This document shows, one piece after another, positions 33,190-64,000 of a stretch of DNA of 64,000 nt (position 1 is its first letter; every line of letters begins with the position of its first letter). The notes beneath the pieces were generated by a model. The model was not told where the DNA came from and searched no databases. It saw only the letters and a program-made list of their open reading frames with translations. The position numbers and the translations under genes are program-made. The DNA comes from Convolutriloba macropyga (Eukaryota), in NCBI RefSeq assembly GCF_964194025.1, contig NC_134470.1:25916001-25980000 (forward strand), read 5' to 3'.

Positions 33190-34020
33190 ACGTAAGAGTG
33201 GGGTTGCAATGGGAGGATTTTTTTTAGGAAAATGCAGCTCAAAACTCTCACATCTTTTTGAGCTGCATTGGGCTTCCAACGGGGGTAAAATGGTGTAAGA
33301 GTGAGGGGATAAAAGACAAATTAACCCCCCACTCTTACATTTTTTGGTCTGTCAAGGGGGTAAAACGATGTAATAGTTCGGGGTAATGGAGAAATTTGTC
33401 CTTTAACCCCTCCCTCTTACACCATTTTAACCCCAATGGAAGCCCAATGCAGCCCAAAAAGACGTAAGAGTTTTAAGCTGCATTTTCCAAAAAAATCCTC
33501 CCTTTGCAGCCCCTTTCTTACATCATTTTACCCCCTTGGCAGCCCAACTCTTACATCATTTTACCCCCTCAAGCTTACATTGTTTTAGCTCCCATAGCTG
33601 AAGACTGCCAGTTTTGCACCCACAACCTCTGTACCCTCATCTGCGTCGCCTTAACCTCCAGACCATCAACGCTTGTCCAATTCTTGATGGTCAATATATA
33701 TGAATAATACTTGTTAGAATTGTCCCCTCTCAACAAATTAGCCCCTCACTCTTACATCTTTTTACCCCCTCAGAACAAATTACCCTCTCACTCTTAAACC
33801 ATTTTACCCCCCTTGGCAACCCAACTCTTACATCATTTTACCCCCTCTGAACAAATTACTCCCTCACTCTTGCACCATTTTACCCCCTTGGCAGCCCAAC
33901 TCTTACATCATTTTACCCCCTCTGAATATATTACCCCCTCACTCTTACATCATTTTCCCCCTTGGCAGCCCAACTCTTACATAATTTTACCCCCTCTGGA
34001 CAATTTACCCCCTCACTCAA
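33190..34020. repeat. C-rich repeat region: inverted ~130-bp arms (33190-33325 vs 33393-33520) plus a ~70-bp tandem array (CTCTTACATCATTTTACCCCC core)
   Basis: Repeated LLHHFTP / SYIILPP in the ORF track reflects the DNA repeat. The arms are reverse complements by eye. Confidence 0.8.
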
Positions 34021-46244: not shown

Positions 46245-46666
46245 ATGAAACCCTTATATTGCTCAGATCAGGATTCTGTTTTTCATTCTCCTCTAGGAGA
46301 ATACAACTACGCATCAGAGAAATGGGAAAGCATGAAGCACTTTTTGTCTGATATATTCTTGGGAGAGTATCGTGAGAGTAGAGTGATTGAGTCCCTGTCA
46401 GAGAGAAGTCTCTCTTACGAGGAATTATACAGGAGAGGAGAAGAGGTCTCATCTCAACTGAGGAGACAGTTTGGAGTGTGTGAAGGATCCATTGTTCACA
46501 TTGTGAGTGAGAATGGATTTGATTGGCTCACAATCCTCCTCGCCTCCTACTTGAACAACTCTATCCTCTCAGCCACTCATCCTAAGTCACCATGGCCAGA
46601 GTGCGAGAGGAACATTGAGACCACGTGTTCGACAGTCCTCATTGTGTCTGAAAAATGTTACAAAAG
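46245..46666 (+). CDS. First coding exon of an ANL-family acyl-CoA synthetase (4-coumarate-CoA ligase/luciferase-like)
   Basis: ATG at 46245. SLSYEELYRR...FGVCEGSIVHIVSENGFDW...HPK...STVLIVSE matches the N-terminal part of AMP-binding enzymes. Donor AG|gtatat at 46666/46667. No further exons seen in the window. Confidence 0.75.
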
Positions 46667-47404
46667 GTATATTTTTTGACGCTCCCCACACCGCATGTCA
46701 ATTCTGTGAAACGAAAAACGTATACTTGTGGTGATGGCGTCGTATTTTATGTAAGATTAACGCAGTCGGCGTTAAAAACAAAATGTCGTTGCTTTTTTAA
46801 CGTCAATCTTACCTATATTAGCGTCGATAATACCTTGATCTTAGATGAATAAGTGTCAAAACATTGCATTTGATCTTCAAAACGATGTTGGATCTTTTTT
46901 GCTAGCGCCCCCACCCCAGCCCTATATAGTCGTTATTACAGCAACCCCAAAATCTAAGTTTTCCTGAATTGTAAGAACGTATTTGCATTTAACTGAAACA
47001 AGAGTGACTAGGTAGATTGAAGGCACTTTTAGAATAGTTTCCTTATAAAAATTTTAAAATCGAGCCCTTATTGTAGCCACCCGGTGCTACGATTCTCATT
47101 TTTCTTGCCAAGTTCCTATTTGGGACTTGCCAAGATCAGAAGAAATCCTATCAGGAATCCTATTGGGAAACTTACCAAGAATTGTAGGTGGTGGTAAGTA
47201 TATGCAAGTTCTCACTTTTCCCACTAGGAATTTTGAGAAACCTCGGAATCCTAGCAAGAAAAATGGGCACAATAAGAATCTTGCTAGGAAATTTTGAGAC
47301 TCTTTAGGATTCTCGTCAGGAAAAGTGGGAGATAATGGGTTTCCCAGTGAGAAAAATGAGAAAACAGTGGGATTGTTTGTAGGGAAAATCAGTACTAGAG
47401 TTAG

Positions 47405-47731
47405 CCAGGACCCGCAAAAAGTTGTTTCAGAGAAGCCGGGACAGTAAAGCACAAAAGCACACGATAAGGGTGAGGGACCCATAGAAGCCGGGACCCTAAA
47501 AAAACAAAAGCTGTCCCAGAAAAGCCACAACAGAAGAGCAGAAGCACACAAGGGATGGGGAGGGACCCAGAGAAGCCGGGATCCTAAAAGAACCAAAAGC
47601 TGTCCCAGAGAAGCCGGGACAGTAAAGCACAAAAAAACACAATAATGGGGAGGGACCCAGAGAAGCCGGAACCCTAACAAAACAAAAGCTGTCCCAGAGA
47701 AGCCAGGACAGAAAAGCAGAAGCACACAAGG
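47405..47731. repeat. GC-richer minisatellite, core CCCAGAGAAGCCGGGAC, alternating ~38/~51-bp spacing (~89-bp period)
   Basis: Seven core copies at about 47428, 47477, 47515, 47566, 47604, 47656 and 47693. Confidence 0.85.
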
Positions 47732-50700
47732 GTCTTTTCGATCCGAAGAATTGATAAATCTCATTCGCGACAGTTGTCCAACACGAAATTTGAATTGAAC
47801 TGTCATCCTGACCAACCAGTGAGTCACTCAAGGCCCATACCCTTTTCAATAGCATTTCTTCTAAACATACGTCAAAATATGACCAGTCATATGCGACAGA
47901 TAACAGGAAAAACGAGAACTGAAGAAAATTTTGGGTTCAGTTTACCCCTTAAGTTGATTTTTCGAGAAAAAATTATCATAAAAACCTTTTTCTAGTGTAA
48001 AACCAAGCTACAATAGTCACCCCATCTTTTGTTATTTGAAAAAGGATGTAAGCAATACTCTCCTTTGACCTCAAACAATTTTGAAATGGTCTTTTTGATC
48101 CGAAGAATTGATAAAACTCATTCGCGACAGTTGTCCAACACGAAATTTGAATTGAACTGTCATCCTAACCAATCAGTCAGGCTTTCAAAGACAAAACTTT
48201 TTGTAAATAGCGTGTTTTGTAACCAGACGTTAATATACGATCAGTCATATGCGAAAGATAACACTTAAAAACGGAAACTGAAGAAAATTTTGGGTTCATT
48301 TTACCCCTTAAGTTGGTTTTTGGTGAGAAAAAATTATCAGAAAAAACCCTCCGCTAGTGTGTAACCACGCTACGTTAGTCCTCCTATCTTTTGGTTTATG
48401 AATCAGGATGTAAGCAATGATCTCCTCTGACCTCAAACAGTTTTGAGATGGTCTTTTCGATCCGAAGAATTGATAAATCTCATTCGCGACAGTTGTCCAA
48501 CTCGAAATTTGAATTGAATTGTCATCCTAACCAACCAGTCAGGCTTTCAAGGACAATACGTTTTGTAAATAGCGTGTTTTGTAACCAGACGTTAATATAC
48601 GATCAGTCATATGCGAAAGATAACACTTAAAAACGAAAACTGAAGAAACTTTTGGGTTCATTTTACCCATTAAGTTGAGTTTTGGAGAGAAAAAGAATTA
48701 TGAGAAAAAACCTTCCGCTAGTGTGAAACCACGCTACGTTAGTCCTCCTATCTTTTGGTTTTTGAATTAGGATGTACGCAATAATCTCCTCTGACCTCGC
48801 ACAATTTTGAAATGGTCTTTTCGATTCGAAGAATTGATAAATCTCATTCGCGATAGTTGTCCAACACGAAATTTGAAATGAACTGTCATCCTAACCAACC
48901 AGTGAGGCTCTCAAGGAAAATACTTTTTGTAAATAGCATGTTATCTAAACATACGTGAAAATATGACCAGTTATACGCGATAGATAACAGGAAAAACGAG
49001 AACTGAAGAAAATTTTGGGTTCATTTTACCACTTAAGTTGATTTTTCGAGAGAAAAAATTATCATAAAAACCTTTTTCTAGTGTAAAACCAAGCTACAAT
49101 AGTCACCCCATCTTTTGTTATTTGAAACAGGATGTAAGCAATACTCTCCTTTGACCTCAAACAATTTTGAAATAGTCTTTTTGATCCGAAGAATTGATAA
49201 AACTCATTCGCGACAGTTGTCCAACACGAAATTTGAATTGAACTGTCATCCTAACCAATCAGTCAGGCTTTCAAAGACAAAACTTTTTGTAAATAGCGTG
49301 TTTTGTAACCAGACGTTAATATACGATCAGTCATATGCGAAAGATAACACTTAAAAACGGAAACTGAAGAAAATTTTGGGTTCATTTTACCCCTTAAGTT
49401 GGTTTTTGGTGAGAAAAAATTATCAGAAAAAACCCTCCGCTAGTGTGTAACCACGCTACGTTAGTCCTCCTATCTTTTAGTTTTTGAATCAGGATGTAAG
49501 CAATGATCTCCTCTGACCTCAAACAGTTTTGAGATGGTCTTTTCGATCCGAAGAATTGATAAATCTCATTCGCGACAGTTGTCCAACTCGAAATTTGAAT
49601 TGAATTGTCATCCTAACCAACCAGTCAGGCTTTCATGGACAATACTTTTTGTAAATAGCGTGTTTTGTAACCAGACGTTAATATACGATCAGTCATATGC
49701 GAAAGATAACACTTAAAAACGGAAACTGAAGAAAATTTTGGGTTCATTTTACCCCTTAAGTTGGTTTTTGGTGAGAAAAAATTATCAGAAAAAACCCTCC
49801 GCTAGTGTGTAACCACGCTACGTTAGTCCTCCTATCTTTTAGTTTTTGAATCAGGATGTAAGCAATGATCTCCTCTGACCTCAAACAGTTTTGAGATGGT
49901 CTTTTCGATCCGAAGAATTGATAAATCTCATTCGCGACAGTTGTCCAACTCGAAATTTGAATTGAATTGTCATCCTAACCAACCAGTCAGGCTTTCATGG
50001 ACAATACTTTTTGTAAATAGCGTGTTTTGTAACCAGACGTTAATATACGATCAGTCATATGCGAAAGATAACACTTAAAAACGAAAACTGAAGAAACTTT
50101 TGGGTTCATTTTACCCATTAAGTTGAGTTTTGGAGAGAAAAAAAATTATGAGAAAAAACCTTCCGCTAGTGTGAAACCACGCTACGTTAGTCCTCCTATC
50201 TTTTGGTTTCTGAATTAGGATGTACGCAATAATCTCCTCTGACCTCGCACAATTTTGAAATGGTCTTTTCGATTCGAAGAATTGATAAATCTCATTCGCG
50301 ATAGTTGTCCAACACGAAATTTGAAATGAACTGTCATCCTAACCAACCAGTGAGGCTCTCAAGGAAAATACTTTTTGTAAATAGCATGTTATCTAAACAT
50401 ACGTGAAAATATGACCAGTCATACGCGATAGATAACAGGAAAAACGAGAACTGAAGAAAATTTTGGGTTCATTTTACCACTTAAGTTGATTTTTCGAGAG
50501 AAAAAATTATCATAAAAACCTTTTTCTAGTGTAAAACCAAGCTACAATAGTCACCCCATCTTTTGTTATTTGAAACAGGATGTAAGCAATACTCTCCTTT
50601 GACCTCAAACAATTTTGAAATGGTCTTTTCGATCCGAAGAATTGATAAATCTCATTCGCGACAGTTGTCCAACACGAAATTTGAATTGAACTGTCATCCT

Positions 50701-53700
50701 AACCAACCAGTCAGGCTTTCAAAGACAATACTTTTTGTAAATAGCGTGTTTTGTAACCAGGCGTTGATATACGATCAGTCATATGCGAAAGATAACACTT
50801 AAAAACGGAAACTGAAGAAAATTTTGGGTTCATTTTACCCCTTAAGTTGATTTTTGGTGAGAAAAAATTATCAGAAAAAACCCTCCGCTAGTGTGTAACC
50901 ACGCTACGTTAGTCCTCCTATCTTTTGGTTTTTGAATCAGGATGTAAGCAATGATCTCCTCTGACCTCAAACAGTTTTGAAATGGTCTTTTCGATCCGAA
51001 GAATTGATAAATCTCATTCGCGACAGTTGTCCAACTCGAAATTTGAATTGAACTGTCATCCTAACCAGCCAGTCAGGCTTTCAAGAACAATACTTTTTGT
51101 AAATAGCGTGTTTTGTAACCAGACGTTAATATACGATCAGTCATATGCGAAAGATAACACTTAAAAACGAAAACTGAAGAAACTTTTGGGTTCATTTTAC
51201 CCATTAAGTTGAGTTTTGGAGAGAAAAAAAAATTATGAGAAAAAACCTTCCGCTAGTGTGAAACCACGCTACGTTAGTCCTCCTATCTTTTGGTTTTTGA
51301 ATCAGGATGTACGCAATAATCTCCTCTGACCTCACACAATTTTGAAATGGTCTTTTCCATTCGAAGAATTGATAAATCTCATTCGCGATAGTTGTCCAAC
51401 ACGAAATTTGAAATGAACTGTCATCCTAACCAACCAGTGAGGCTCTCAAGGAAAATACTTTTTGTAAATAGCATGTTATCTAAACATACGTGAAAATATG
51501 ACCAGTCATACGCGATAGATAACAGGAAAAACGAGAACTGAAGAAAATTTTGGGTTCATTTTACCCCTTAAGTTGATTTTTCGAGAGAAAAAATTATCAT
51601 AAAAAACCTTTCGCTAGTGTGAAACCAAGCTAAAATAGTCCTCCCATCTTTTGTTATTTGAAACAGGATGTAAGCAATACTCTCCTTTGACCTCAAACAA
51701 TTTTGAAATGGTCTTTTCGAGTCGAAGAATTGATAAATCTCATTCGCGACAGTTGTCCAACATGAAATTTGAATTGAACTGTCATCCTAACCAACCACTG
51801 AGGCTCTCAAGGACAATACTTTTTGTAAAAAGCATGTTATCTAAACATACGTCAAAATATGACCAGTCATATGCGATAGATAACAGGAAAAACGAGAACT
51901 GAAGAAAATTTTGGGTTCATTTTACCCCTTAAGTTGATTTTTCGAGAGAAAAAATTATCATAAAAAACCTTTCACTAGTGTGAAACCACGCTAGAATAGT
52001 CCTCCTATCTTTTGGTATTTGAATCAGGATGTAAGTAATGATCTCCTCTGACCTCAAACAATTTTGAAATGGTCTTTTCGAGTCGAAGAATTGATAAATC
52101 TCATTCGCGACAGTTGTCCAACATGAAATTTGAATTGAACTGTCATCCTAACCAACCACTGAGGCTCTCAAGGACAATACTTTTTGTAAAAAGCATGTTA
52201 TCTAAACATACGTCAAAATATGACCAGTCATATGCGATAGATAACAGGAAAAACGAGAACTGAAGAAAATTTTGGGTTCATTTTACCCCTTAAGTTGATT
52301 TTCGAGAGAAAAAATTATCATAAAAAACCTTTCGCTAGTGTGAAACCACGCTAGAATAGTCCTCCTATCTTTTGGTATTTGAATCAGGATGTAAGCAATG
52401 ATCTCCTCTGACCTCAAACAATTTTGAAATGGTCTTTTCGATCCGAAGAATTGATAAATCTCATTCGCGACAGTTGTCCAACACGAAATTTGAATTGAAC
52501 TGTCATCCTAACCAACCAGTCAGGCTTTCAAAGACAATACTTTTTGCAAATAGCGTGTTTTGTAACCAGACGTTAATATACGATCAGTCATATGCGAAAG
52601 ATAACACTTAAAAACGAAAACTGAAGAAAATTTTGGGTTCATTTTACCCCTTAAGTTGAGTTTTGGTGAGAAAAAATTATCAGAAAAAACCTTCCGCTAG
52701 TGTGAAACCACGCTACGTTAGTCCTCCTATCTTATGGTTTCTGAATCAGGATTAAAGCAATAATCTCCTCTGACCTCAAACAATTTTGAAATGGTCTTTT
52801 CGATTCGAAGAATTGATAAATCTCATTCGCGACAGTTGTCCAACACGAAATTTGAATTGAACTGTCATCCTAACCAACCAGTCAGGCTTTCAAAGACAAT
52901 AATTTTTGCAAATAGCGTGTTTTGTAACCAGACGTTAATATACGATCAGTCATATGCGAAAGATAACACTTAAAAACGAAAACTGAAGAAAATTTTGGGT
53001 TCATTTTACCGCTTAAGTTGAGTTTTGGTGAGAAAAAAATATCAGAAAAAACATTCCGCTAGTGTGAAACCACGCTACGTTGGTCCTCCTATCTTATGGT
53101 TTCTGAATCAGGATTAAAGCAATAATCTCCTCTGACCTCAAACAATTTTGAAATGGTCTTTTCGATTCGAAGAATTGATAAATCTCATTCGCGATAGTTG
53201 TCCAACACGAAATTTGAATTGAACTGTCATCCTAACCAACCAGTGAGGCTCTCAAGGACAATACTTTTTGTAAATAGCAAGTTATCTAAACATACGTGAA
53301 AATATGACCAGTCATATGCGATAGATAACAGGAAAAACGAGAACTGAAGAAAATTTTGGGTTCATTTTACCCCTTAAGTTGAGTTTTGGTGAGAAAAAAT
53401 TATCAGAAAAAACCTTTCGCTAGTGTAAAACCAAGCTACAATAGTCCTCCCATCTTTTGTTATTTGAAACAGGATGTAAGCAATACTCTCCTTTGACCTC
53501 AAACAATTTTGAAATGGTCTTTTCGAGTCGAAGAATTGATAAATCTCATTCGCGAAAGTTGTCCAACATAAAATTTGAATTGAACTGTCATCCTAACCAA
53601 CCAGTGAGGCTCTCAAGGACAAAAATTTTTGTAAAAAGCATGTTATCTAAACATACGTCAAAATATGACCAGTCATATGCGGTAGATAACAGGAAAAACG

Positions 53701-56440
53701 AGAACTGAAGAAAATTTTGGGTTCATTTTACCCCTTAAGTTGATTTTTCGAGAAAAAATTATCATAAGAAACCTTTCGCTAGTGTGAAACCACTTTAGAA
53801 TAGTCCTCCTATCTTTTGGTATTTGAATCAGGATGTAAGCAATGATCTCCTCTGACCTCAAACAATTTTCAAATGGTCTTTTCGATCCGAAGAATTGATA
53901 AATCTCATTCGCGACAGTTGTCCAACACGAAATTTGAATTGAACTGTCATCCTAACCAACCAGTCAGGCTTTCAAAGACAATATTTTTTGTAAATAGCGT
54001 GTTTTGTAACCAGACGTTCATATACGATCAGTCAAATGCGAAAGATAACACTTAAAAACGAAAACTGAAAAAAATTTTGGGTTCATTTTACCCCTTAAGT
54101 TGATTTTTGGTGAGAAAAAATTATCAGAAAAAACCCTCCGCTAGTATGAAACCACGCTACGTTAGTCCTCCTATCTTTTGGTTTTTGAATCAGGATTAAA
54201 GCAATAATCTCCTCTGACCTCAAACAATTTTGAAATGGTCTTTTCGATTCGAAGAATTGATAAATCTCATTCGCGATAGTTGTCCAACACGAAATTTGAA
54301 TTGAACTGTCATCCTAACCAACCAGTGAGGCTCTCAAGGACAATACTTTTTGTAAATAGCATGTTATCTAAACATACGTGGAAATATGACCAGTCATATG
54401 CGATAGATAACAGGAAAAACGAGAACTGAAGAAAATTTTGGGTTCATTTTACCCCTTAAGTTGAGTTTTGGTGAGAAAAAATTATCAGAAAAAACCTTTC
54501 GCTAGTGTAAAACCAAGCTACAATAGTCCTCCCATCTTTTGTTATTTGAAACAGGATGTAAGCAATACTCTCCTTTGACTTCAAACAATTTTGAAATGGT
54601 CTTTTCGAGTCGAAGAATTGATAAATCTCATTCGCGACAGTTGTCCAACATAAAATTTGAATTGAACTGTCATCCTAACCAACCAGTGAGGCTCTCAAGG
54701 ACATTACTTTTTGTAAAAAGCATGTTATCTAAACATACGTCAAAATATGACCAGTCATATGCGATAGATAACAGGAAAAACGAGAACTGAAGAAAATTTT
54801 GGGTTCATTTTACCCCTTAAGTTGATTTTTCGAGAGAAAAAATTATTATAAAAAACCTTTCGCTAGTGTGAAACCACGCTAGAATAGTCCTCCTATCTTT
54901 TGGTATATGAATCAGGATGTAAGCAATAATCTCCTCTGACCTCAAACAATTTTGAAATGGTCTTTTCGATCCGAAGAATTGATAAATCTCATTCGCGACA
55001 GTTGTCCAACACGAAATTTGAATTGAACTGTCATCCTAACCAACCAGTCAGGCTCTCAAGGACAATACTTTTTGTAAATAGCATGTTATCTAAACATACG
55101 TCAAAATATGACCAGTCCTATGCGATAGATAACAGGAAAAACGAGAACTGAAGAAAATTTTGGGTTCATTTTACCCCTTAAGTTGAGTTTTGGTGAGAAA
55201 AAATTATCAGAAAAAACCTTTCGCTAGTGTAAAACCAAGCTACAATAGTCCTCCCATCTTTTGTTATTTGAAACAGGATGTAAGCAATACTCTCCTTTGA
55301 CTTCAAACAATTTTGAAATGGTCTTTTCGAGTCGAAGAATTGATAAATCTCATTCGCGACAGTTGTCCAACATAAAATTTGAATTGAACTGTCATCCTAA
55401 CCAACCAGTGAGGCTCTCAAGGACAATACTTTTTGTAAAAAGCATGTTATCTAAACATACGTCAAAATATGACCAGTCATATGCGATAGATAACAGGAAA
55501 AACGAGAACTGAAGAAAATTTTGGGTTCATTTTACCCCTTAAGTTGATTTTTCGAGAGAAAAAAGTATTATAAAAAACCTTTCGCTAGTGTGAAACCACG
55601 TTAGAATAGTCCTCCTATCTTTTGGTATATGAATCAGGATGTAAGCAATAATCTCCTCTGACCTCAAACAATTTTGAAATGGTCTTTTCGATCCGAAGAA
55701 TTGATAAATCTCATTCGCGACAGTTGTCCAACACGAAATTTGAATTGAACTGTCATCCTAACCAACCAGTCAGGCTCTCAAGGACAATACTTTTTGTAAA
55801 TAGCATGTTATCTAAACATACGTCAAAATATGACCAGTCCTATGCGATAGATAACAGGAAAAACGAGAACTGAAGAAAATTTTGGGTTCATTTTACCCCT
55901 TAAGTTGATTTTTCGAGAGAAAAAATTATTATAAAAAACCTTTCGCTAGTGTGAAACCACGCTAGAATAGTCCTCCTATCTTTTGGTATATGAATCAGGA
56001 TGTAAGCAATAATCTCCTCTGACCTCAAACAATTATGAAATGGTCTTTTCGATCCGAAGAATTGATAAATCTCATTCGCGACAGTTGTCCAACACGAAAT
56101 TTGAATTGAACTGTCATCCTAACCAATCAGTCAGGCTTTCAAAGACAAAACTTTTTGTAAATAGCGTGTTTTGTAACCAGACGTTAATATACGATCAGTC
56201 ATATGCGAAAGATATCACTTGAAAACGAAAACAGAAGAAAATTTTGGGTTCATTTTACCCCTTATGTTAAGTTTTGGAGAGAAAAAATTATCCAAAAAAC
56301 CTTTTCTCTAGTGTGAAACCACGCTACGTTAGTCTTCCTATCTTTTGGTGTTTGAATCAGGATGTAAGCAATAGCCTCTTATGACCTCAAACAATTTTGA
56401 AATTGTCTTTTCAATTCGAAATGATAAATCTCATTCGCAA
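47732..56440. repeat. Satellite array, ~361-bp monomer, ~24 copies, two main subtypes with irregular higher-order structure
   Basis: GTCTTTTCGA(T/G)(C/T)CGAAGAATTGATAAATCTCATTCGCGA recurs every ~360-363 bp from 47732 to ~56405. Repeated short ORFs at 49534/49896, 52429/52791 etc. show the period. Confidence 0.98.
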
Positions 56441-56555
56441 AAATTGAATTAAATTTGAAAGAAAACACAAAAGAAGTGAAACACTCGGAAAGAAGTTTTC
56501 AACAGTTATAGTAAATCATTTTCAATCATTTTGAACAGGGTTTCTCTGAAACAGA

Positions 56556-57736
56556 TTAATCGCGCTCAAAAGTTACGCAAAGTGTAGACAAAATTAAGCG
56601 TCCGTCTATTTCTCGAACAATGCAAGGCGATAAAAGTTTTTTCACATCAACTAAGGTGACATCACTATTCGCACACTGAATTAAATGATGATTTTCGTAG
56701 CAGCTACTGACCAATTCAAGCCCCTCGTCCAAATTCACTGCTACTCTGGAATGCTCGGTTGGTGACGAGTGATTTTCGAGTTTCTGTATAAGAAAACCTG
56801 TGAATGTTTTCGATGAGTCAAAATCAACAAGATGCACAGCTGCACTTTTTTCCGAAACATCAACAAATATGTCAGTCAACTGACCAAAACCTGTCGCGCC
56901 TTCTTTTTCATACTCAACAAAATGCACGCAGGTTTTGTTAACGTTCCAAGTACATTTACTGCCGTGACAAGCATACATCTTAGAATCTAGCTCAAACGTC
57001 TTGCTTGACATTAAAGTCTCCCGGCTTCCATTTACTTCAATTATACGCTCCGTAGGCTGAAGCAGCTTGAGTGAACCCACTGTTATCGTCTTCGAGTTTC
57101 CCTTTAACTTTTTCCTGAAAAATCGTCTTTGATGCCGTTTGACTGCTAGCTTTGTAGCAACAATGGCACTTGTGTTTGGACCAATAGCGCGTTTCAGATG
57201 AAAATGAGCGGACTCAAATGGAATTGACGACAATGAAGCCAAGGGTCCCGTCTTTTTTGCCTGGTCAGCTAGATGACCGAGAGAATGCATATTGTAACTT
57301 TGAGCCGCTTCTCCATAAAAATTAGGAACCAATTTCCGAAAAATTTTGATAAGAACCTCTGCCTTGTCATAACTCTGCTCTCTGACCGGTTCAATTAAAT
57401 AACGTATTGCAGTACTCAGTAGATAGAAGTGCACAAACATGGGCACTGAGAGAACACCAAAAAAAGACACAAAGCCGTATAAGAGAAACAACTTCAGTTC
57501 TGTTGCCTTCCAATATTTGAGTGTTACTAGAGATCGCAATTGTCTTTTGTTGTCAGTTCCTGGCACCTTACACTTTGAAAGGTTGGCTGACACTTGCGTT
57601 TTATTCCGGCCCAAAAATTTTCTCGATCCGTTGATTCTGCAGAGAAGGGTTTTGACAACACCAAGGAGCACTTGATGCATGTAGTCTATCAGCATTTCAT
57701 CGGGGAGAGTAACAACACTTTCAATTGCTGAGGGCC
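56556..57736 (-). CDS. SET-transposase fusion, exon 2: C-terminal half of CACTA/EnSpm-like DDE transposase
   Basis: IDYMHQVLLG, WKATELKLFLLY and YNMHSLGHL...GPL...SSIPFES motifs. Acceptor tttttgtttag|GG joins exon 1 in frame (LYGLRG-PSAIE). Stop at 56556. Confidence 0.9.
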
Positions 57737-57870
57737 CTAAACAAAAAGATATCCAAAACAATTGGAAAATTTTTTGAGTTTTTAAGGGACTCTAGGAAAA
57801 AAACAGTGACTAAACGTTCTTAAACTCGAGCTATGCAGTAATGGGAGAAAGAAAAGATCAGAAATATTAC

Positions 57871-59734
57871 CTCTTAAACCATATAATGATCTGCACTCTG
57901 ATCCCAGGCATTCCAAAATTAACTGCCGCTCTTTTGATGTCCTTTGAGACACATCAGGCTCATGGAACGGATAAATCCAGGTATCTTTAGCCAGAGCTCT
58001 ACGTCCAACAGCTAGGCAATTCGTGCACCCATAACGCCCATTAAACTGAGTTTGGTTCACTAGAGGTGCTTTCATTACCATATCAACAATTACGTATTTT
58101 AGCTTCACAGTGAACGTATAGGAACTCCCATTTATCTGGAGAACCTTTGGCGAACTGAAACCTGACAGGATTTTGACTGTATGTTTCATCAGATTTTCAC
58201 AATGCGGTTTTTTTTCTCCACCAAATAATGAAACTAAGAGTAAATTCCGGTAGCTAACACGTCGCCTTGCGGGTAAGTTGAGAAGCATGAGCCAGACTGG
58301 GTACAGAGAAAATTTAGCTGAGTTAAAAGGAGAAACCCCGTCAGTGCTTAGAGCAAAATATAAACAGAATTTATTCGACTTCGGTAAACACAAGTCAGTC
58401 TGGAGTTGATAACCTTCAGTGCTAACAAGATCAAAATTTTCACTGAGCAAGTGACTGAGTTGTCGCTCAAAATTAAGGTCATACAGGAGGCCTTCTGGTA
58501 GTTGAGTTTCACTAAGGCCAGATAGTGAACTGATTTCTTGTTGTCTTAGTGAATATAAGCTCGGCAAATTGTTAGCTGCAGGTAACGCTTTTCTAAACAA
58601 GGAAAGAACTGCGCCCAAACCACGCTCGGGGAGATTATGAATGTCAGCTAATTCTATTAACTCAGAGCAAAATGATCGGGTAGTCAAACTCGAACCCAAA
58701 CAGATCATCTCTTCAATTTCAGAGCTACTTGTCATGTTCGACCTTTCACGCCTTTCATCATCAGAGTGATCACCTTGAGACCCTATCGGCTCTAAAAGCT
58801 CTTCGTCGTTGTCCGATATAAAGTCAATTCTATTAGGCGTTGAGCATTCCTTTTCTCTTACATTGTCAAAAAAAAGATTAGCTTCGGATGAAATGCCTAG
58901 ACTTTCATTTTCTGATATATCGGGCGACGCAGTAATAGAGCTCGAAGACTCGGAAGATGTTTCGTATCTGACTCTGTACCGAGACTTCTTAATTCTTCGC
59001 GGCTGATAAGTTGGCCCAACATCTCGATGTCGCCTACGAAGTTTTTGAAGAGCTCGTTGCTCTGTGGTACTTGTCACGAGCCGTTCGCTAACAGTGCTTA
59101 GGCTTCTAACTTTTCCAGAGCGCGTCCAACTTTGAATTGGATGTTCTTTACCGTGCATTTCAGAGAAGGGACATTCGCAATGCACTCTATTTGGGCCAAA
59201 ATAATCACCACTGTATAGCACAGTTATTTCATCACCAGGAAAAAGACCGTTTCTTGAAATCACTCGAATGCTCACTTTCGTTCGCTTTGAATTCCCAACA
59301 TAAGTACAGTTTTCCCTGCAACTAGAATTGATGAAGGAAACGCCTCCTAGCATAATTTTCGATCCCGTATGATGACGAAAAACCGACACATCGTTAACAC
59401 CCTCAACAATTTCGCATTCTTTAATCGGAGCCAAGAAACCAACAAGACCAGGTATAACATCTCCTTTCACAAATCTTTTCTTAGCAAAGACGCCAAAGCT
59501 TGTGAAACCGTTGTCCATTTTAAAATTTGAAGAAAGAGCTCGATACTCAACGTTTAACAAAGACAGAACATATTCCTTCTCAATTTCGTTTTTCAGATGA
59601 CTGAATCCGGACTGGTTTTTAAGAGATAAGTCGCAGACAATTTTATGGGAAACTTTGCCGTCCGAATCAATGTACTTCGAAGTGAGTTCAGCATCTGCTA
59701 ACGCTAAGTCATGCCAAAATATATGACGATTCAT
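57871..59734 (-). CDS. SET-transposase fusion, exon 1: Suv4-20/Set9-like SET domain, low-complexity linker and N-terminal half of CACTA/EnSpm-like transposase
   Basis: ATG at 59734. SET at ~59150-59500: GVFAKK, LVGFLA, NDVSV, LGGVSFINSSCRENC, GDEITVLYSGDYFG...CEC. Transposase: STDGVSPF..S.YPVW...NLP...R...N...KP and IVDMVMKA...NGRYGCTNC. Donor G|gtaata at 57871/57870. Confidence 0.9.
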
Positions 59735-59774
59735 GTTTTGTACTAAAGTATGAAACAAAGGAGTCAATTGGGTG

Positions 59775-60055
59775 TGGAAAAACTTAGAAAACAGTATATT
59801 CAAACAATTTCAAACACCGACCAGGCTATCTAAATTTGGTGTCGATCCCCTAACGAGCGTGATTTGAACCAGTTTAAAGTTGTATCAACCGAAAAGAAAG
59901 ACAAAGGATGAATTGCTTTGGCTAAAGTTTTATTTCATTTCAATTGCCTTATCCCACATTGTGAAACAGTTGGAATGGGTTATAATGAGAACGGAAAAAG
60001 CGTGCAGCGAAAAATTAGCAGGCCACAGAGGTTGAATTTAAAAATAAAACATTTT
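59775..60055 (-). promoter_or_regulatory. ~290-bp paralogous upstream module, copy 1 (others at ~61150-61425 and ~62332-62605); putative promoter/5' leader
   Basis: Shared blocks GGCTATC(T/C)AA, AAAGTT..TCAA, TATCCCA and AATGAGAACGGAAAAA in all three copies, each just upstream of a minus-strand ATG. Function is inferred. Confidence 0.5.
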
Positions 60056-60181
60056 AAGCATCACTGAATCAAATTATAGCTTGTCAGAAAATTGATTAGT
60101 TCAACACATTATTAAGACAACAGCAATAAGTTCTAAGAAAAGAGGATAATCAAACTCAGTGATCATGACTCAGTGTTCCAG

Positions 60182-60715
60182 TTAACAATTTTTGCAGCAA
60201 AAAATTTCGGATTCTACAAAGCAATCATTGCAACTAAATTCTCCGCACTTCGGACATTCTACAAAGTCAGCATTTGTGGATTTGACATTTATGCGGCAGA
60301 CCGCACATCGTAGTGGCAAGAAAGAGCCAAAGCTTGAAGTCAAATTCCGTTTCTTGAAGCTTTGCCACCATTCAGTTCCTGCTTCCTGCCGTTCATGCCA
60401 AGTTGCAGGGAAGTTCACATCATAGTACTTCCCCTTTTGATAAACATATCCCAGTATTTGCTTTAGTTGTCTTTTTCTTTGTGAGCACCAACCTTTGATA
60501 TCAGTAGCCATGGCTGCCTCTTGGATTTTGTTGAACACGTTCCTCTGAGCAGGACTATTGGTCTTCAGCTTCCTTTTCAGGGTACTCAGTGGCACACCCG
60601 TAGACCGTGCAACACATCTTGCTCCATAATTCCCCTCTTGCACCAAAAACAACGCCATCTTCAAATCATACTCTGTGTAGCTATGAGCGGTTTTTCGTTC
60701 GTAGGATCTAGGCAT
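60182..60715 (-). CDS. HTH-psq + CENP-B-type HTH + C-terminal 8-Cys PHD-like finger protein (pogo/Tigger-like, no DDE domain), 177 aa
   Basis: MPRSYERKT..YTEYDLKMAL..V..G......VARSTGVPLSTLKRKL; AGTEWWQSFKKRN; C-x2-C-x13-C-x2-C-x4-C-x2-C-x8-C-x2-C at the C-terminus. Confidence 0.8.
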   Translation of the reverse strand: MPRSYERKTAHSYTEYDLKMALFLVQEGNYGARCVARSTGVPLSTLKRKLKTNSPAQRNVFNKIQEAAMATDIKGWCSQRKRQLKQILGYVYQKGKYYDVNFPATWHERQEAGTEWWQSFKKRNLTSSFGSFLPLRCAVCRINVKSTNADFVECPKCGEFSCNDCFVESEIFCCKNC

Positions 60716-60945
60716 TTTGCATCTTAAACAGTTACACAAACGGAGACAATAATTGTTTCAAAAATTGATGCGTTATCTATGTTATTTAGTAAGATGTTCC
60801 ACAAAGATGTGTCGTAAAAATCAAATTCTAAAAAACGGTTCGATTCATTTGCAGGTTCTTCGGGGGACAACAAAACGAAAAGTCCAGGTTGGCATTGTCT
60901 AATTCAGAAAAAATTGAGCTCAAAAAAGGAATACAAAGAAAATAC

Positions 60946-61112
60946 AACATATTCCTTCTCAATTTCTTTTTTCACATGACTGAATGCCGACTGGTTTTTA
61001 TGAGACAAGTCACAGAAAATTTTATGGAAACTTTGCCGTCCGAATAAATATACTTTGAAGTGAGCTCAGCATCTGCTAACGCTAAGTCATGCCAAAAAAT
61101 ATGACCATTCAT
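60946..61112 (-). pseudogene. Frameshifted, truncated duplicate of the 5' end of the SET-transposase gene
   Basis: Matches 59567-59734. Reads MNGHIFWHDLALADAELTSKYIYSDGKVS, then a 1-bp deletion (GTTTCCATA vs GTTTCCCATA) and an early stop. Confidence 0.85.
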
Positions 61113-61637
61113 GTTTCGCACTGAAGTATGAAACGAAAGGAGTCAACTAGGTGTGGGAAAATTTAGCATATTAAAACAATTAAACACAGCCCGGGCTATC
61201 TAAATTTGATCTCAATCACCTAACTGGCCCAATTTCAACGAGGTTAAAGTTTGATCAACCAAAAAGAAAGAAAGCAGAAACTGGTTTGGTTAAGCTTTTA
61301 CATCATTTCAAATGTTTTATCCCAACTTGCGGAGCAGTTGACATGAGTGATAATGAGAACGGAAAAAGATTGCGAAAAAACTGGAAGCCAACAGAAGGTG
61401 AATTTATGAATACCGAAAACTTTTTACCATCAATAAGAGTCATTTTAAAAGGCTAAAAAACTTGTATCAAAACAATATTAACACAACAGCATCAGTAAAA
61501 GTAAAATAAAATCAAGAACTTCTGGTTCAAAAAGTATTATCGCTGTATAGAATACTGTATGAGAGACGCTGTATAAACCAGGAAACGATCCATCGTAATT
61601 GCTCGAATTGTTTTCAAATCGAAGGCTTTCAAAACTC

Positions 61638-62153
61638 CTAGTTTAAGTCCAATTGTTCACCATTATTTCCGGAGTTGTTAACCGTAGCTGACAGTTTCTT
61701 CAAGTCTCTACCTTTTTGATTGATTGCCCTTCTGGCTTCCTCCCATTTATTGCCGAACCTGCTCTCAATATAGCTTTTGATAATGTCGACTTTTTCGCTG
61801 TCCAGCGGAGTACGGGTTGAAGTCTTCTGTGGGCTTATTATTCCCTCTCGCAGTTCGTCTTCCGTAAACAATTCACTTGCCAAACGGACTCCATATGCCC
61901 CAGGAGTTGCACCAGTTTTCAACTTCAAACCACTGTCACTCTTGCCAATTGACTGATCGTCTTTCGCTGGGGTTGAGATGTCGGCTCCTTCGTTTGACGT
62001 TATCGCTACTTTATGATACGAGGCTCTCTCGTTGCACCTACTTAGGGCTTCCTGCAAACGCCTGCTCTCTATTCTAGTCTTCTTAACTGAATTTTTGAGC
62101 TCTTCTGACGCGGATTCTAAATCGCTTAGAACTTTCTCAAGCTTGGTGTTCAT
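61638..62153 (-). CDS. Coiled-coil + BEN-domain protein (BEN-1), ~171 aa, possibly with an upstream exon
   Basis: N-terminal heptads, then YGVRLASELFTEDELREG...TPLDSEKVDIIKSYIESRF...WEEARRAINQKGRD, a typical BEN pattern (LF..EEL, LD...I, W.....IN.K.R). An acceptor-like ttatttctag lies 10 nt upstream of the ATG. Confidence 0.8.
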   Translation of the reverse strand: MNTKLEKVLSDLESASEELKNSVKKTRIESRRLQEALSRCNERASYHKVAITSNEGADISTPAKDDQSIGKSDSGLKLKTGATPGAYGVRLASELFTEDELREGIISPQKTSTRTPLDSEKVDIIKSYIESRFGNKWEEARRAINQKGRDLKKLSATVNNSGNNGEQLDLN

Positions 62154-62959
62154 TTCCAACTTCTAGAAATAAGGCAAAAATGAAAATTTCTTCAAAACTT
62201 AGTAAAATTGTGTTGTCCCTAAGGATTCATGCAATTATTAAAACCCAAACTTATGTGCTAATAATTTGCTTATGTGCATAATAATAACTTATGTGCTTAA
62301 TATTTGAAAACACTTCAAACTTTTTAGGATCTGGAAAAAACTTAGAAAACAGCTTTTTCAAACAATTTTGAACCAAGCCGGCTATCCAATTTAACAGCAG
62401 TTACCTATCTATCACGCTTTGAACGAGGATAAAGTTGATTCAAACAAAAAAGACTAAAAGAGGTTAATTTGGTTAAAAGTTTGTTTCATTTGAAGTGATC
62501 TATCCCAATTCTCGAAACAGTCGACATGGGTGAAAATGAGAACGGAAAAATCTTGCTGCAAAAGTATAGAAGCCCAGAGAAGGTAAATTAATGAATACCA
62601 AAAAAAATCAATGAGAATCACTTCACAAGGCTGTAAAACATCAAATGCATAAATACGCCTCTCAATCAACAGTAATTACATTGAAAGCACCACTATGAAA
62701 GGTAATCGTAGCAGCTAAGAGAATCACTTTTTTACTGTATTGTAGGCATAATATCAGTTTACATAAACTTATTGCGAAAACAAAACAAGAAGCATTGGAT
62801 GACTCTGACAGTCAGAACAAATCGACTTTGTCACAATTAAATGATTGGAATGAGATCTGGATTAATTTAACAGGCAGTTGTATCAACATGAAAGCATAGT
62901 TTGCAACAGCATGAAAACGATCACACGATGTATCTTACTTTCTCGCAGCCATAAAAGTA

Positions 62960-64000
62960 TCACCCTTCAGTGACCACCCCAAAGCCATCATTTTCCTTCG
63001 ACGCATCCAGATCCTCCTTTTCAAAATTCTCAGCACTAGCATCCATCAACCGTTTCTTGACTTTTTTCGAGTCCCGTGCACAATCATTTATCGACTTTCG
63101 CGCAAGATACCATTGTCCAGGGAAACGCTCCTCGACCATCTTCTGAATTTTTTCCATGCGCTCAGGATCTAAAGCTGGTTTTGTTGCCTTCTCTGGTTGC
63201 GCAATTCCTCTAATTCGCTCATCTAAGGTGAATAATCTTTTAAAAAGATTAATACCAAATTTACCGGGCGTGCTCCCGGGCAGCTTATTGAGCACTTCGC
63301 CTCCTTCAATAAATTGCTCGCACGCACTGGCTTTCGGTGTTGGCTGCGCCGAAACTTCAGGAGCGTTAGAGTCTAGAAGCTTTCGAATATTTCGAGAATC
63401 TCGTCTTTGGATGTTCAATGCTTCGGTGACGAGCTTGAGCGTTTCACAAACGCTTTCTAGAGTCTCTACAAGGCGTTTATTTTGAACTTGATTAACAGCA
63501 ACTTCCACATTCTCGCTTACTTCTGGTTCATCGTTTACATCGTTGATCATTGCTGTTTCAGCCTCTTGATTTGGTTGATGTGTTTCCTCGTTATCAGACA
63601 AGTTAATAGACTCATTATCGCTCTCTACCCGGATTGACTTCGATCCTGACTGCACCGGTTCTGTCGCTTTTCGTTTTCCGGAAAAGAACGACACGATGTC
63701 GCCATCTTTCTTTTGCGGGGGTTGACTTTTGCAATTTTGAGACTTGGAACTGTCTGGCAGTTCTTCATGAAGATCAGAGAACGTTAAATCAACCATTTCT
63801 GTAGAGGACACATTGTCAATCCTGTTTTCTACTTGCGTGAGTACTTGCCTCTCAGAATCCTCAGAATCCGTCACACCAATGAACTTAGCGTGAAAAGTAC
63901 CCTCGTCATAGCGCAACGGTAGTTTTTTGTTCGAGCCCGGCGCATTCGCGAACTTCAATCGTTCCGAGTAGTTTAAGTCCTTCGGCCAAAACTTGCTATT
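62960..64000 (-). CDS. BEN-domain protein (BEN-2), 5' end beyond the window
   Basis: Frame is open to the window edge (NSKFWPKDLNYSERLKF...). Acidic linker and coiled coil, then FGINLFKRLFTLDERIRG...ALDPERMEKIQKMVEERF...WYLARKSINDCARD. Paralogous to BEN-1 (GSTPGKFG vs GATPGAYG). Confidence 0.82.
   Translation of the reverse strand, partial: NSKFWPKDLNYSERLKFANAPGSNKKLPLRYDEGTFHAKFIGVTDSEDSERQVLTQVENRIDNVSSTEMVDLTFSDLHEELPDSSKSQNCKSQPPQKKDGDIVSFFSGKRKATEPVQSGSKSIRVESDNESINLSDNEETHQPNQEAETAMINDVNDEPEVSENVEVAVNQVQNKRLVETLESVCETLKLVTEALNIQRRDSRNIRKLLDSNAPEVSAQPTPKASACEQFIEGGEVLNKLPGSTPGKFGINLFKRLFTLDERIRGIAQPEKATKPALDPERMEKIQKMVEERFPGQWYLARKSINDCARDSKKVKKRLMDASAENFEKEDLDASKENDGFGVVTEG

What the first reader, a model, noticed from the sequence alone, without database searches (positions are those of the whole stretch)
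47080..64000. A >17-kb transposon carrying a putative chromatin toolkit: writer, reader, DNA binders and its own satellite
Seen: four co-oriented, compact minus-strand genes (BEN-2, BEN-1, HTH-HTH-PHD-like, SET-transposase). About 115 bp after the transposase stop comes an 8.7-kb satellite, then a minisatellite and short subterminal-like repeats. The compact layout contrasts with the intron-rich host genes nearby. Established: BEN domains are sequence-specific DNA-binding/chromatin modules; PHD fingers read histone tails; maize Spm TnpA and Arabidopsis VANDAL VANC proteins are element-encoded factors that bind repeats in their own element and counter silencing. Inference: this may be an animal analogue, a self-targeting epigenetic control or anti-silencing module in which BEN/HTH proteins bind the internal repeats and act with the SET domain.
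Basis: partly seen in the sequence, partly recalled or inferred. Interest (0 to 1): 0.92.

Follow-up and report, generated by a model that had tools for sequence, protein, structure and literature searches.

The report
Giant SET-transposase transposon carrying its own satellites
This is one copy of a young, multi-copy, very large DNA transposon whose transposase is fused to a histone-methyltransferase-like domain and which carries three DNA-binding protein genes and several satellite arrays as cargo; that it controls its own chromatin is a good but untested idea.

Summary
Window 47080-64000 contains, on the minus strand, two BEN-domain genes, an HTH/zinc-finger gene and a 1014-aa SET-DDE transposase gene with one 134-nt intron. 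These are followed by a 361-bp satellite (24 copies), an 89-bp minisatellite and a 340-bp subterminal region.

It is one mobile unit, not a pile-up. At least four other copies in the same assembly are collinear and 94-99% identical. Four copies end at exactly the same base (window 47080) next to four unrelated flanks.

Families only 60% and 38% identical in protein keep the same gene set. Each has its own long-period tandem array after the genes.

A 48-bp minisatellite and a 180-bp satellite upstream of BEN-2 travel with it. The 5' end, TIR and TSD were not found.

The transposase is of the CACTA/Mirage (CMC) type. The SET domain is closest to Suv4-20/KMT5B-C (H4K20), but its NH motif is invariantly NS. 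"PHD-like" is not supported.

The anti-silencing reading is untested and not favoured. I rate it a new variant of a known kind, of moderately high interest.

The parts
47080..47416 (-). 3' terminus and about 340-bp subterminal region. It holds short direct and inverted motifs (ttcttgccaag, cctattggga, ctaggaaattttgaga). On the window + strand the terminus reads CCCGGTGCTACGATTCTC...
   Evidence: Similarity to L009, L012 and L013 stops exactly at 47080, and the four flanks are unrelated.
47417..47730 (-). 89-bp minisatellite, 3.4 copies here and about 20-24 in other copies. The unit holds two small palindromes, GTCCC-N9-GGGAC.
   Evidence: TRF. It is expanded in L009 9485-11595, L014 16586-18417 and L002 896-3565.
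47731..56438 (-). 361-bp satellite, 24 monomers of four subtypes, with recent multi-monomer duplications.
   Evidence: The same satellite lies at the same place in L001/L002, L007, L008 and L014, with 9-21 copies.
56556..57736 (-). SET-transposase exon 2: C-terminal half of the DDE transposase, with the H(3)H motif HSLGH at 57287 and the catalytic E in FESAH at 57218.
   Evidence: It aligns to the C-halves of intronless 1021-1073-aa orthologs.
57737..57870 (-). 134-nt GT..AG intron of the SET-transposase gene.
   Evidence: Splicing restores a single 1014-aa frame. The intron is 99-100% conserved in L007 and L008 and absent in the 38% family.
57871..59734 (-). SET-transposase exon 1. It contains a KMT5B/C-like SET domain (about 59150-59497; FINSSCRENC at 59335), a Ser-rich linker, and the DDE core (D in STDGVS at 58348, D in VDMVMKAPL at 58087, C(2)C YGCTNC at 58033).
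60182..60715 (-). Gene for a 177-aa DNA-binding protein: an N-terminal pipsqueak/CENP-B-type HTH, a second Tc5-like HTH, and a C-terminal 8-Cys zinc module.
   Evidence: ortholog HTH_7 E 6e-8, HTH_Tnp_Tc5 E 8e-4; LCoR HTH, E 0.005.
61638..62153 (-). BEN-1, a 171-aa protein with a coiled-coil region and a BEN domain.
   Evidence: (BEN, E 1.7e-5), and (BEND3, E 4e-4).
62960..64000 (-). BEN-2, 398 aa in intact copies and cut by the window end. It has an N-terminal beta-rich domain, an acidic linker, a coiled coil and a BEN domain.

Best explanation
SHOWN. The region is the 3' 16.9 kb of one copy of a very large autonomous DNA transposon. It is at least 18.8 kb in the most complete copy and probably more than 22 kb here. 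All relatives found come from one ENA assembly, ERZ25071359. The family is young and multi-copy.

The order, in gene orientation, is:
- an unknown 5' end;
- a 180-bp satellite of at least 4.5 kb;
- a 48-bp minisatellite;
- BEN-2, BEN-1 and the HTH/Zn protein;
- the SET-DDE transposase;
- the 361-bp satellite;
- the 89-bp minisatellite;
- a 340-bp subterminal region;
- the 3' end, ...GCACCGGG.

Some copies also carry an SGNH/GDSL-like hydrolase gene. The transposase is of the CACTA/Mirage (CMC) type, and all its catalytic motifs are intact. Its N-terminus is a Suv4-20/KMT5B-C-like SET domain.

INFERRED mechanism.
- The DDE domain cuts and pastes the element.
- The two BEN proteins and the HTH/Zn protein act as sequence-specific binders of the element's own minisatellites and subterminal repeats, in the role TnpA plays for Spm. 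They would assemble the ends or regulate transcription.
- The SET domain couples the transposase to nucleosomal H4, either by methylating H4K20 or only by docking on it. This could serve DSB repair, target choice or chromatin state at the element.
- The satellites arise from and travel with the element, and expand and contract after insertion.

The confidence given (0.6) is for the whole statement. For the shown part alone, one mobile CMC-type element carrying these genes and arrays, I would put about 0.85. For the inferred mechanism I would put about 0.3-0.4.
For: One unit:
- Window 63999-54827 is collinear with L001 at 94%.
- L007, L008 and L014 are collinear over 16-20 kb.
- Gene sequences in the window are 99.2-99.7% identical to L007 and L008, with no stop codons.

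Mobility:
- Four copies end at the same base with unrelated flanks.
- L007/L009 and L014/L012 have different 3' flanks but the identical junction between the 180-bp satellite and the 48-bp minisatellite.

Copy number:
- 40, 34, 49 and 96 protein variants in four clusters at 90% identity.
- 65 variants of the 3'-end ORF, on contigs of about 35 distinct lengths.

Selection and conservation:
- dN/dS is 0.19-0.42 for all genes against the 97%-identical copy.
- The same gene set occurs in the 60% family (L003) and the 38% family (L004/L011).
- Each family has a long tandem array after the genes: 361 bp, an unrelated 361 bp, and 887 bp.

Protein identities:
- Transposase: D, D, C(2)C, H(3)H and E are all present. 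Relatives hit DUF1258 (Mirage) above the cut-off (PMC3985635).
- SET: SUV420H1/H2 at E 3e-12, against NSD2 at 0.008.
- BEN and HTH identities.

Possible binding sites: the 5' minisatellite units carry palindromes, AGCCGATTGTGTGGCT in this family and AGCCAATTGTGTGGCT in the 60% family. The latter contains CCAATTG, the core of the Insv BEN site CCAATTGG (PMC6317261, PMC4281564).
Against: - The 5' terminus, TIR and TSD were not found. No inverted copy of the 3' terminus and no cluster of its subterminal 9-mers occurs in the 11 loci that had been fetched when one search was run.
- The 3' end reads ...CACCGGG, not the ...TG / CACTA expected for CMC elements.
- The Pfam transposase match of the window copy itself is below the gathering score.
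- The SET NHxC motif is NSSC in every family. The equivalent His is needed for activity in SUV39H1 (my recollection of Rea et al. 2000), so 'writer' is uncertain.
- No binding, expression or chromatin data exist.
- The satellites of different families are unalignable, so no conserved binding sequence in them can be shown.
Confidence: 0.6

Rival explanations
1. One reading: a self-targeting anti-silencing module, analogous to Spm TnpA or VANDAL VANC. BEN/HTH proteins would bind the internal satellites and, with the SET domain, keep the element active.
For: - Three element-encoded DNA-binding proteins and a SET domain are conserved across families.
- The element is rich in repeats that could serve as binding sites.
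- The family is young and seemingly active.
- Transposon-encoded epigenetic counter-measures are known (PMC12730594).
Against: - No homology to TnpA or VANC.
- The nearest SET relatives, KMT5B/C, write a mark of constitutive heterochromatin and DSB repair, not an activating one (established knowledge).
- The NH-to-NS change makes catalysis uncertain.
- Satellite sequences are not conserved between families.
Confidence: 0.12
2. The SET domain is a catalytically dead H4-tail or nucleosome docking module. It would tether the transposase to chromatin for target choice or transpososome stability, and nothing is 'written'.
For: - Ser replaces the NH-motif His in all 14 aligned sequences from five or more families, while the rest of the fold is strongly conserved.
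- The domain sits on the transposase itself rather than on a separate gene.
Against: - Other catalytic-site hallmarks are invariant: the Asn of the NH motif, the Tyr after E..V, and the CxC post-SET.
- dN/dS is 0.23 in the SET part, which fits either reading.
Confidence: 0.25
3. The satellites are passive by-products. Subterminal and internal repeats of large DNA transposons expand by slippage and unequal exchange, and play no part in the element's control.
For: - Array length varies from 9 to 24 monomers between 99%-identical copies.
- Monomer subtypes show recent local duplications.
- A LINE sits inside the array in one copy.
- Satellite sequence is unrelated between families.
- Internal arrays are known in CACTA and foldback elements (PMC8978399, PMC7320549, PMC4079207).
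Against: - A long-period array lies at the same position, directly after the gene block, in three families that differ by up to 62% in protein.
- Array periods cluster near multiples of about 179 bp: 180, 359, 361, 361, 534 and 887.
Confidence: 0.35
4. It is not a transposon but a host gene cluster in satellite-rich heterochromatin, spread by segmental duplication.
For: - No 5' terminus, TIR or TSD was found.
- Satellites flank the genes on both sides.
- Contigs often break next to the genes.
Against: - Four copies share a base-exact 3' end with unrelated flanks.
- The window copy lies 400 bp from an exon of an AMP-binding-enzyme gene in unique DNA.
- The DDE transposase is intact.
- There are dozens of near-identical copies.
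Confidence: 0.04
5. It is a chance pile-up of unrelated nested insertions.
For: None beyond the mosaic look of the region.
Against: The order and junctions are the same in five or more copies, and the gene content is conserved across three families.
Confidence: 0.01

Closest known systems
CMC (CACTA/EnSpm - Mirage - Chapaev) DNA transposons
   Same: [quoted passage not shown]
- Pfam Transposase_21 / DUF1258 (Mirage) homology.
- Large size, a multi-gene layout, subterminal repeats and internal tandem arrays.
   Different: - The 3' end is ...CACCGGG, not CACTA/...TG.
- TIR and TSD were not demonstrated.
- The transposase is fused to a SET domain.
- The accessory genes are BEN and psq-HTH proteins, not TnpA.
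- At least four separate arrays are present, two of them true satellites.
SETMAR / Metnase (primate SET + mariner transposase fusion)
   Same: One polypeptide joins a SET lysine-methyltransferase domain to a DDE/D transposase domain. SETMAR is linked to DSB repair (PMC2847698, PMC8704517).
   Different: - SETMAR is a single-copy domesticated host gene with an inactive transposase of another superfamily, and its SET domain is reported to methylate H3K36 (PMC2847698).
- Here the fusion sits inside a multi-copy, apparently mobile element, and its SET domain is KMT5B/C-like.
SET-encoding transposons of oomycetes (HarbingerS, MuDR; Kojima and Jurka 2014, cited in PMC12730594)
   Same: A DNA transposon carries a SET histone-methyltransferase-like coding sequence.
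   Different: - Different superfamilies and hosts.
- No BEN/HTH genes or satellites are mentioned in the one-sentence mention in PMC12730594; I did not read the original reports.
- Here the SET domain is fused in frame to the transposase.
Maize Spm TnpA / Arabidopsis VANDAL VANC
   Same: Element-encoded accessory proteins next to the transposase, and repeat-rich subterminal regions. This is a functional analogy only.
   Different: - No sequence relationship.
- Binding and anti-silencing are untested.
- The domains here are BEN and psq-HTH.
Satellite-carrying transposons (Tetris in Drosophila virilis, PMC4079207; Chenopodium CACTA, PMC7320549 and PMC8978399)
   Same: Internal tandem repeats travel with a DNA transposon and vary in copy number. 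Such elements are a possible source of genomic satellites.
   Different: - The arrays here are much longer (up to 8.7 kb and more than 15 kb).
- There are several per element, with long monomers.
- They sit beside chromatin-related genes in an autonomous element.

Membership tests
CMC (CACTA/EnSpm-Mirage-Chapaev) transposons | DDE transposase homologous to Transposase_21 (PF02992) / DUF1258 (PF06869) | tested here: met
   - Window protein: PF02992 E 6.4e-5 (22.7 bits, below the cut-off of 28.6) and DUF1258 weak.
- SET-fused relatives hit DUF1258 above the cut-off, for example P0158 at 51.2 bits against 33.1.
- The profile search finds 4765 relatives at E <= 1e-10, most matching only the transposase core.
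CMC (CACTA/EnSpm-Mirage-Chapaev) transposons | [quoted passage not shown] | tested here: met
   Residues in the 1014-aa product: STDGVS (D463), VDMVMKAPL (D551), YGCTNC (570-573), HSLGH (772-776), FESAH (E796).
CMC (CACTA/EnSpm-Mirage-Chapaev) transposons | Termini 5'-CA...TG-3' (CACTA-type TIRs) | tested here: not met
   The 3' end, defined by four copies, is ...GAGAATCGTWGCACCGGG. No inverted copy was found. The 5' end was never reached, so the TIR itself remains open. Up to three terminal G could instead be a fixed target or TSD.
CMC (CACTA/EnSpm-Mirage-Chapaev) transposons | 2-3-bp target site duplication | not testable with these tools
   No copy was obtained with both ends. The bases right after the 3' end are TGG, AAG, ATC and TTT.
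SET-domain lysine methyltransferases, KMT5B/C (Suv4-20) branch | SET domain sequence similarity, closest to KMT5B/C | tested here: met
   PF00856 at 27.7 bits, above 22.4. SUV420H1/H2 chains at E 3e-12 to 7e-12; the next best is NSD2 at 0.008.
SET-domain lysine methyltransferases, KMT5B/C (Suv4-20) branch | NHxC SAM-pocket motif | tested here: not met
   FINSSCRENC against FINHDCRPNC in KMT5B. The Ser is invariant in 14 sequences of five or more families.
SET-domain lysine methyltransferases, KMT5B/C (Suv4-20) branch | Conserved Tyr of the C-terminal SET motif and Cys-rich post-SET | tested here: met
   E172, V175, Y177, F182, C189 and C191 are invariant (P0007 numbering).
SET-domain lysine methyltransferases, KMT5B/C (Suv4-20) branch | H4K20 methyltransferase activity | not testable with these tools
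   Needs an enzyme assay.
BEN-domain DNA-binding proteins | BEN domain (PF10523) | tested here: met
   - BEN-1: 25.4 bits, above 23.2.
- BEN-2: 17.7 bits, below the cut-off.
- The family profile hits BEND3 BEN domains at E 4e-4.
- The BEN-2 model matches BEND6, BANP and BEND3 BEN structures with Foldseek probability 0.9-0.96 but E about 0.2-0.8.
PHD finger | C4-H-C3 zinc signature and PHD profile match | tested here: not met
   The four aligned orthologs share a Cys-only pattern with no conserved His; 7 Cys columns are strictly invariant and an eighth is offset by an indel in L004. There is no PHD hit in Pfam or PDB. The AF2 model has pLDDT 53 and is unusable.
Pipsqueak / CENP-B-type HTH | psq-type HTH followed by a Tc5/CENP-B-type second HTH | tested here: inconclusive
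   - Window protein: HTH_7 at E 0.012 only.
- 38%-family ortholog: HTH_7 at 33.1 bits (above 23.8), HTH_Tnp_Tc5 at 19.8 bits (below 22.2), CENP-B_N weak.
- The profile hits the LCoR HTH at E 0.005.
Spm TnpA / VANC-type element-encoded regulators | Sequence homology to TnpA or VANC; binding to own subterminal repeats | tested here: not met
   No Pfam hit to a TnpA-type family in any accessory protein. Binding was not testable. This is a functional analogy only.

The most novel reading that the evidence does not exclude
The element may be a mobile, self-contained heterochromatin module. It would combine:
- a Suv4-20-like H4K20 writer on the transposase;
- a Tudor-like H4K20me reader on the N-terminus of BEN-2, for which the support is weak (the model's best structural matches are KDM4A/B hybrid Tudor domains, including entries with an H4K20me3 peptide);
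- sequence-specific BEN/HTH binders.

These would act together on the element's own nucleosome-period satellites (179-180, 359-361, 534 and 887 bp). Each insertion would then seed a phased, H4K20-marked satellite block. That would make the family a vehicle that creates and spreads satellite or heterochromatin domains, possibly centromere-like ones.
Probability: 0.1. Interest if true: 0.92.

Novelty: new variant of a known kind. Interest (0 to 1): 0.64.

Why it matters
- It is a natural, apparently active transposon whose transposase carries a Suv4-20-like SET domain. SETMAR was assembled by the host; here the element itself carries the fusion. This gives a direct system for asking what a histone-methyltransferase domain does for transposition, whether in repair, targeting or chromatin state.
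- The conserved trio of DNA-binding genes and the family-specific arrays make a testable case of protein-repeat co-evolution inside a mobile element.
- Kilobase-scale satellites with nucleosome-like periods travel with the element and change length between 99%-identical copies. The family is therefore a concrete model for how satellites are born and dispersed.
- SET-transposase fusions of this type occur in at least eight further sequence clusters from other public assemblies. None of those I looked up carries a name.

Tried and rejected
- 5' end. I walked upstream in ctg28717 (L005, L006, L010) and fetched three further copies (L007, L008, L014). Every locus ran off inside a satellite. All 12 contig look-ups are used.
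- Inverted copy of the 3' terminus. I searched for it and for clusters of its subterminal 9-mers, and found none.
- 361-bp unit as 2 x 180 bp, or related to the upstream satellites: no similarity.
- Rfam on the 340-bp ultra-conserved block: no hit.
- AF2 model of the HTH/Zn protein: pLDDT 53, so it was not used for a fold search.
- BEN-2 fold search: no match at E <= 0.001. The Tudor-like hits are only a lead.
- Host organism. It could not be named, because all homologs are unnamed ENA or Logan proteins. 'Animal' rests on the BEN domains, the APE+RT LINE and GT-AG introns only.
- The L003 SGNH gene call contains an in-frame stop, so it was not passed to the protein tools. I compared it locally instead.
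- Literature searches found no description of a SET-CMC transposon with BEN genes. Absence from that library is not proof of novelty.
Full report
**1. What is in the window**

TRF confirms a 361-bp satellite at 47731-56438 (24.1 copies, 91% matches) and an 89-bp minisatellite at 47417-47718.

The satellite has 24 monomers of 352-368 bp. They fall into four subtypes with recent multi-monomer duplications, and the unit has no 2 x 180-bp substructure.

The minus strand carries five ORFs. Pfam assigns them as follows:
- SET (27.7 bits, above the cut-off of 22.4) and Transposase_21 / DUF1258 (weak) to 57782-59803.
- BEN (25.4 bits, above 23.2) to 61638-62159.
- A weaker BEN to 62960-63958.
- A weak HTH_7 to 60182-60739.
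- Nothing to 56556-57761.

The last ORF is the C-terminal half of the transposase. A GT..AG intron at 57737-57870 joins it in frame to the SET ORF. The product is 1014 aa with one terminal stop. This matches the intronless orthologs of 1021-1073 aa.

BEN-2 runs off the window. Up to base 64000 it is identical to the 398-aa ortholog of L007.

**2. It is one mobile unit**

All relatives found come from one ENA assembly, ERZ25071359. The 99% hit lies on a 64,199-bp contig, evidently the window's own.

A second copy (ctg28717; L001/L002) is collinear with window 63999-54827 at 94%. It has the same 361-bp satellite, here split by a LINE, and the same 89-bp minisatellite.

Three further copies are collinear over 16-20 kb: L007/L009, L008 and L014/L012. 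In the genes they are 99.2-99.7% identical to the window, with no stop codons.

The decisive result is the 3' end. Similarity stops at window base 47080 in four copies, and the flanks are unrelated:
- window: TGGCTACAAT
- L009: AAGATTCTTG
- L012: ATCACTATAC
- L013: TTTAGGCCCC

Copy number is high. The four 90% protein clusters hold 40, 34, 49 and 96 variants. There are 65 variants of an ORF covering the 3' minisatellite and subterminal region, on contigs of about 35 distinct lengths.

**3. The element is bigger than reported, and the 5' end is missing**

In L007, L008 and L014 a 48-bp minisatellite of about 0.86 kb lies just upstream of BEN-2. Its unit contains the palindrome GAGCCGATTGTGTGGCTC. 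Before it lies a 179/180-bp satellite of at least 4.5 kb.

The junction...gtaggagt|aggactgattgaag..., is identical in the three copies. L007/L009 and L014/L012 have different 3' flanks. The 180-bp satellite is therefore carried by the element.

The most complete copy (L014) spans at least 18.75 kb. The window copy would be at least 22 kb if it is built alike.

The ctg28717 copy differs upstream:
- a different satellite of 174-185/359 bp, more than 15 kb long;
- a 534-bp tandem repeat, 7.5 copies;
- an SGNH/GDSL-like hydrolase gene;
- a duplicated 48-bp array.

No locus contains an inverted copy of the 3' terminus or its subterminal motifs.

**4. Conservation across families**

The 60% family (L003) has the same order: BEN-2, BEN-1, HTH/Zn and SET-transposase, with proteins 56-61% identical. 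A 361-bp satellite follows, with more than 23 copies. It cannot be aligned with the window's satellite.

Upstream, L003 has a 94-bp minisatellite with AGCCAATTGTGTGGCT motifs, the SGNH gene (59.5% aa identity to the ctg28717 one), and the same 180-bp satellite as L007 at 93%.

The 38% family (L004/L011) has small BEN, large BEN, SET-transposase (intronless) and HTH/Zn. An 887-bp tandem repeat of at least 10 copies follows.

Against the 97% copy, dN/dS is 0.19-0.42 for every gene.

The gene set and a long array after the genes are therefore ancestral, selected features of this clade. The array sequences themselves turn over.

**5. The proteins**

*Transposase.* Alignment of 14 sequences shows invariant D (STDGVS), YPVWL..NLP, D (VDxxxKAPL), NQTQFNGxYGCxNC, HSLxH and FExAH. 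These are the DDE triad with the C(2)C and H(3)H motifs that define the CMC/CMCT group (PMC12730594).

A profile search of 1.84 billion representatives gives 9433 hits, 4765 of them at E <= 1e-10. Most cover only the core.

Of the ten hits I examined further, eight combine SET with DUF1258 and/or Transposase_21, and one more (P0144) shows SET plus a profile match across the transposase core. They come from ENA and Logan assemblies, and none is named. DUF1258 corresponds to Mirage transposases and is a close relative of Transposase_21/CACTA (PMC3985635).

*SET domain.* The best solved relatives are SUV420H1/H2 (KMT5B/C) at E 3e-12. The next best is NSD2 at 0.008. The NH motif reads NS in all families, while the Asn, the C-terminal Tyr and the CxC are invariant.

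*BEN proteins.* The family profile hits BEND3 BEN domains at E 4e-4.

*HTH/Zn protein.* It has a psq-type HTH (LCoR at E 0.005; ortholog HTH_7 at E 6e-8), a Tc5-like second HTH (E 8e-4), and an 8-Cys module without His. This is not a PHD finger by any test run.

*BEN-2 model.* An AF2 model gives a confident N-terminal beta-rich domain (residues 20-115, pLDDT 77-88). Its best PDB matches are the KDM4A/B hybrid Tudor domains (probability 0.8-0.9, E about 0.1, TM about 0.35). That is too weak to count as more than a lead.

**6. Mechanism**

Shown:
- an autonomous-looking CMC-type element with an intact transposase;
- recent insertions;
- co-inherited accessory genes and arrays.

Inferred:
- BEN and HTH proteins bind the element's minisatellites or subterminal repeats. 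The CCAATTG core in the 60% family's 5' minisatellite resembles the Insv BEN site CCAATTGG (PMC6317261, PMC4281564).
- The SET domain links the transposase to H4K20 or the nucleosome.

KMT5B/C marks are associated with heterochromatin and DSB repair (established knowledge), and the NH motif is altered. The SETMAR precedent is PMC2847698.

**7. Context**

The insertion lies 400 bp downstream of an exon that starts with ATG and encodes profile positions 18-100 of an AMP-binding enzyme domain (46245-46679, + strand). It is probably inside an early intron of that gene, antisense to it. This is an inference, because the rest of the gene would lie beyond the window.

**8. Verdict**

- Observation: confirmed.
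- 'One transposon with its own satellite and a chromatin-flavoured gene set': supported.
- 'PHD reader' and 'anti-silencing': not supported or untested.
- Novelty: a new variant of a known kind, namely a CMC transposon with a SET-fused transposase, BEN/psq accessory genes and multiple internal satellites.

Noticed in passing
L006 10001-10528; L003 about 2950-3458; absent from L007, L008 and L014: A fifth element gene encodes an SGNH/GDSL-like hydrolase of 175 aa, with GDSH, GGND and DGVHL blocks. It is 59.5% identical between the two families and matches Pfam Lipase_GDSL_2 at E 2e-4, below the cut-off. It is present in only some copies.
   Followed up: partly
L003 2406-2739 = L006 9628-9966: A 340-bp non-coding block upstream of the SGNH gene is 93% identical between families whose proteins are only about 60% identical. 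Its first 150 bp are amplified in a 534-bp tandem repeat in L006 (5773-9778). Rfam gives no hit. It begins AGAGTTTGGTCTAC, which faintly resembles the 3' terminus read in reverse (CCCGGTGCTAC).
   Followed up: partly
L007 1-4541, L014 1-4507, L003 1-2405: The 180-bp satellite is 93% identical between the window family and the 60% family, whereas their 361-bp satellites are unalignable. This points to exchange or concerted evolution of the 5' array between element families.
   Followed up: partly
window 47731-56438; L003 13161-21737; L006 5773-9778; L004 6392-15479; L010 5005-20165: By autocorrelation the array periods are 179/180, 359, 361, 361, 534 and 887 bp, and the minisatellite is 89 bp. 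All lie close to multiples (or half) of about 178-180 bp, a nucleosome-repeat-like length. No statistical test was made beyond this listing.
   Followed up: partly
L002 5867-9269 (same copy as L001 18593-21070): A non-LTR retrotransposon with endonuclease and reverse-transcriptase domains is inserted inside the 361-bp satellite of the ctg28717 copy.
   Followed up: no
window 29772-31516, minus strand: Three consecutive ORFs of 172, 149 and 220 aa. The last has an integrase core domain (rve, E 3e-9). This is probably a fragment of an LTR-type retroelement.
   Followed up: partly
window 32034-32378, minus strand; 46245-46679, plus strand: Host-like exons: a WD40-repeat exon and an AMP-binding-enzyme exon. 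The latter starts with ATG and is followed by a GT donor-like site. The transposon lies about 400 bp downstream of it, probably in an intron.
   Followed up: partly
window 26076-26263 / 27050-27237; 33184-33961: A 1.16-kb unit with inverted arms of 188 nt, 89% complementary, plus nested arms. A cluster of inverted copies of a motif of about 32 nt (GGGGTAAAATGGTGTAAGAGTGAGGGG). These look like MITE or foldback repeats unrelated to the finding.
   Followed up: no
window 22901-23100: A run of 200 N, an assembly gap or masked stretch. It was left untouched.
   Followed up: no
L003 2817-3458: The public gene call for the L003 SGNH ORF contains an in-frame stop near its 5' end. The real ORF probably starts downstream, at MNLSHLS.
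   Followed up: partly
BEN-2 residues 20-115 (model m507fbd5f1e30; window about 63700-64000 and beyond): A conserved N-terminal domain with no Pfam match folds confidently. Its best, but non-significant, structural matches are KDM4A/B hybrid Tudor domains, including entries bound to an H4K20me3 peptide.
   Followed up: partly
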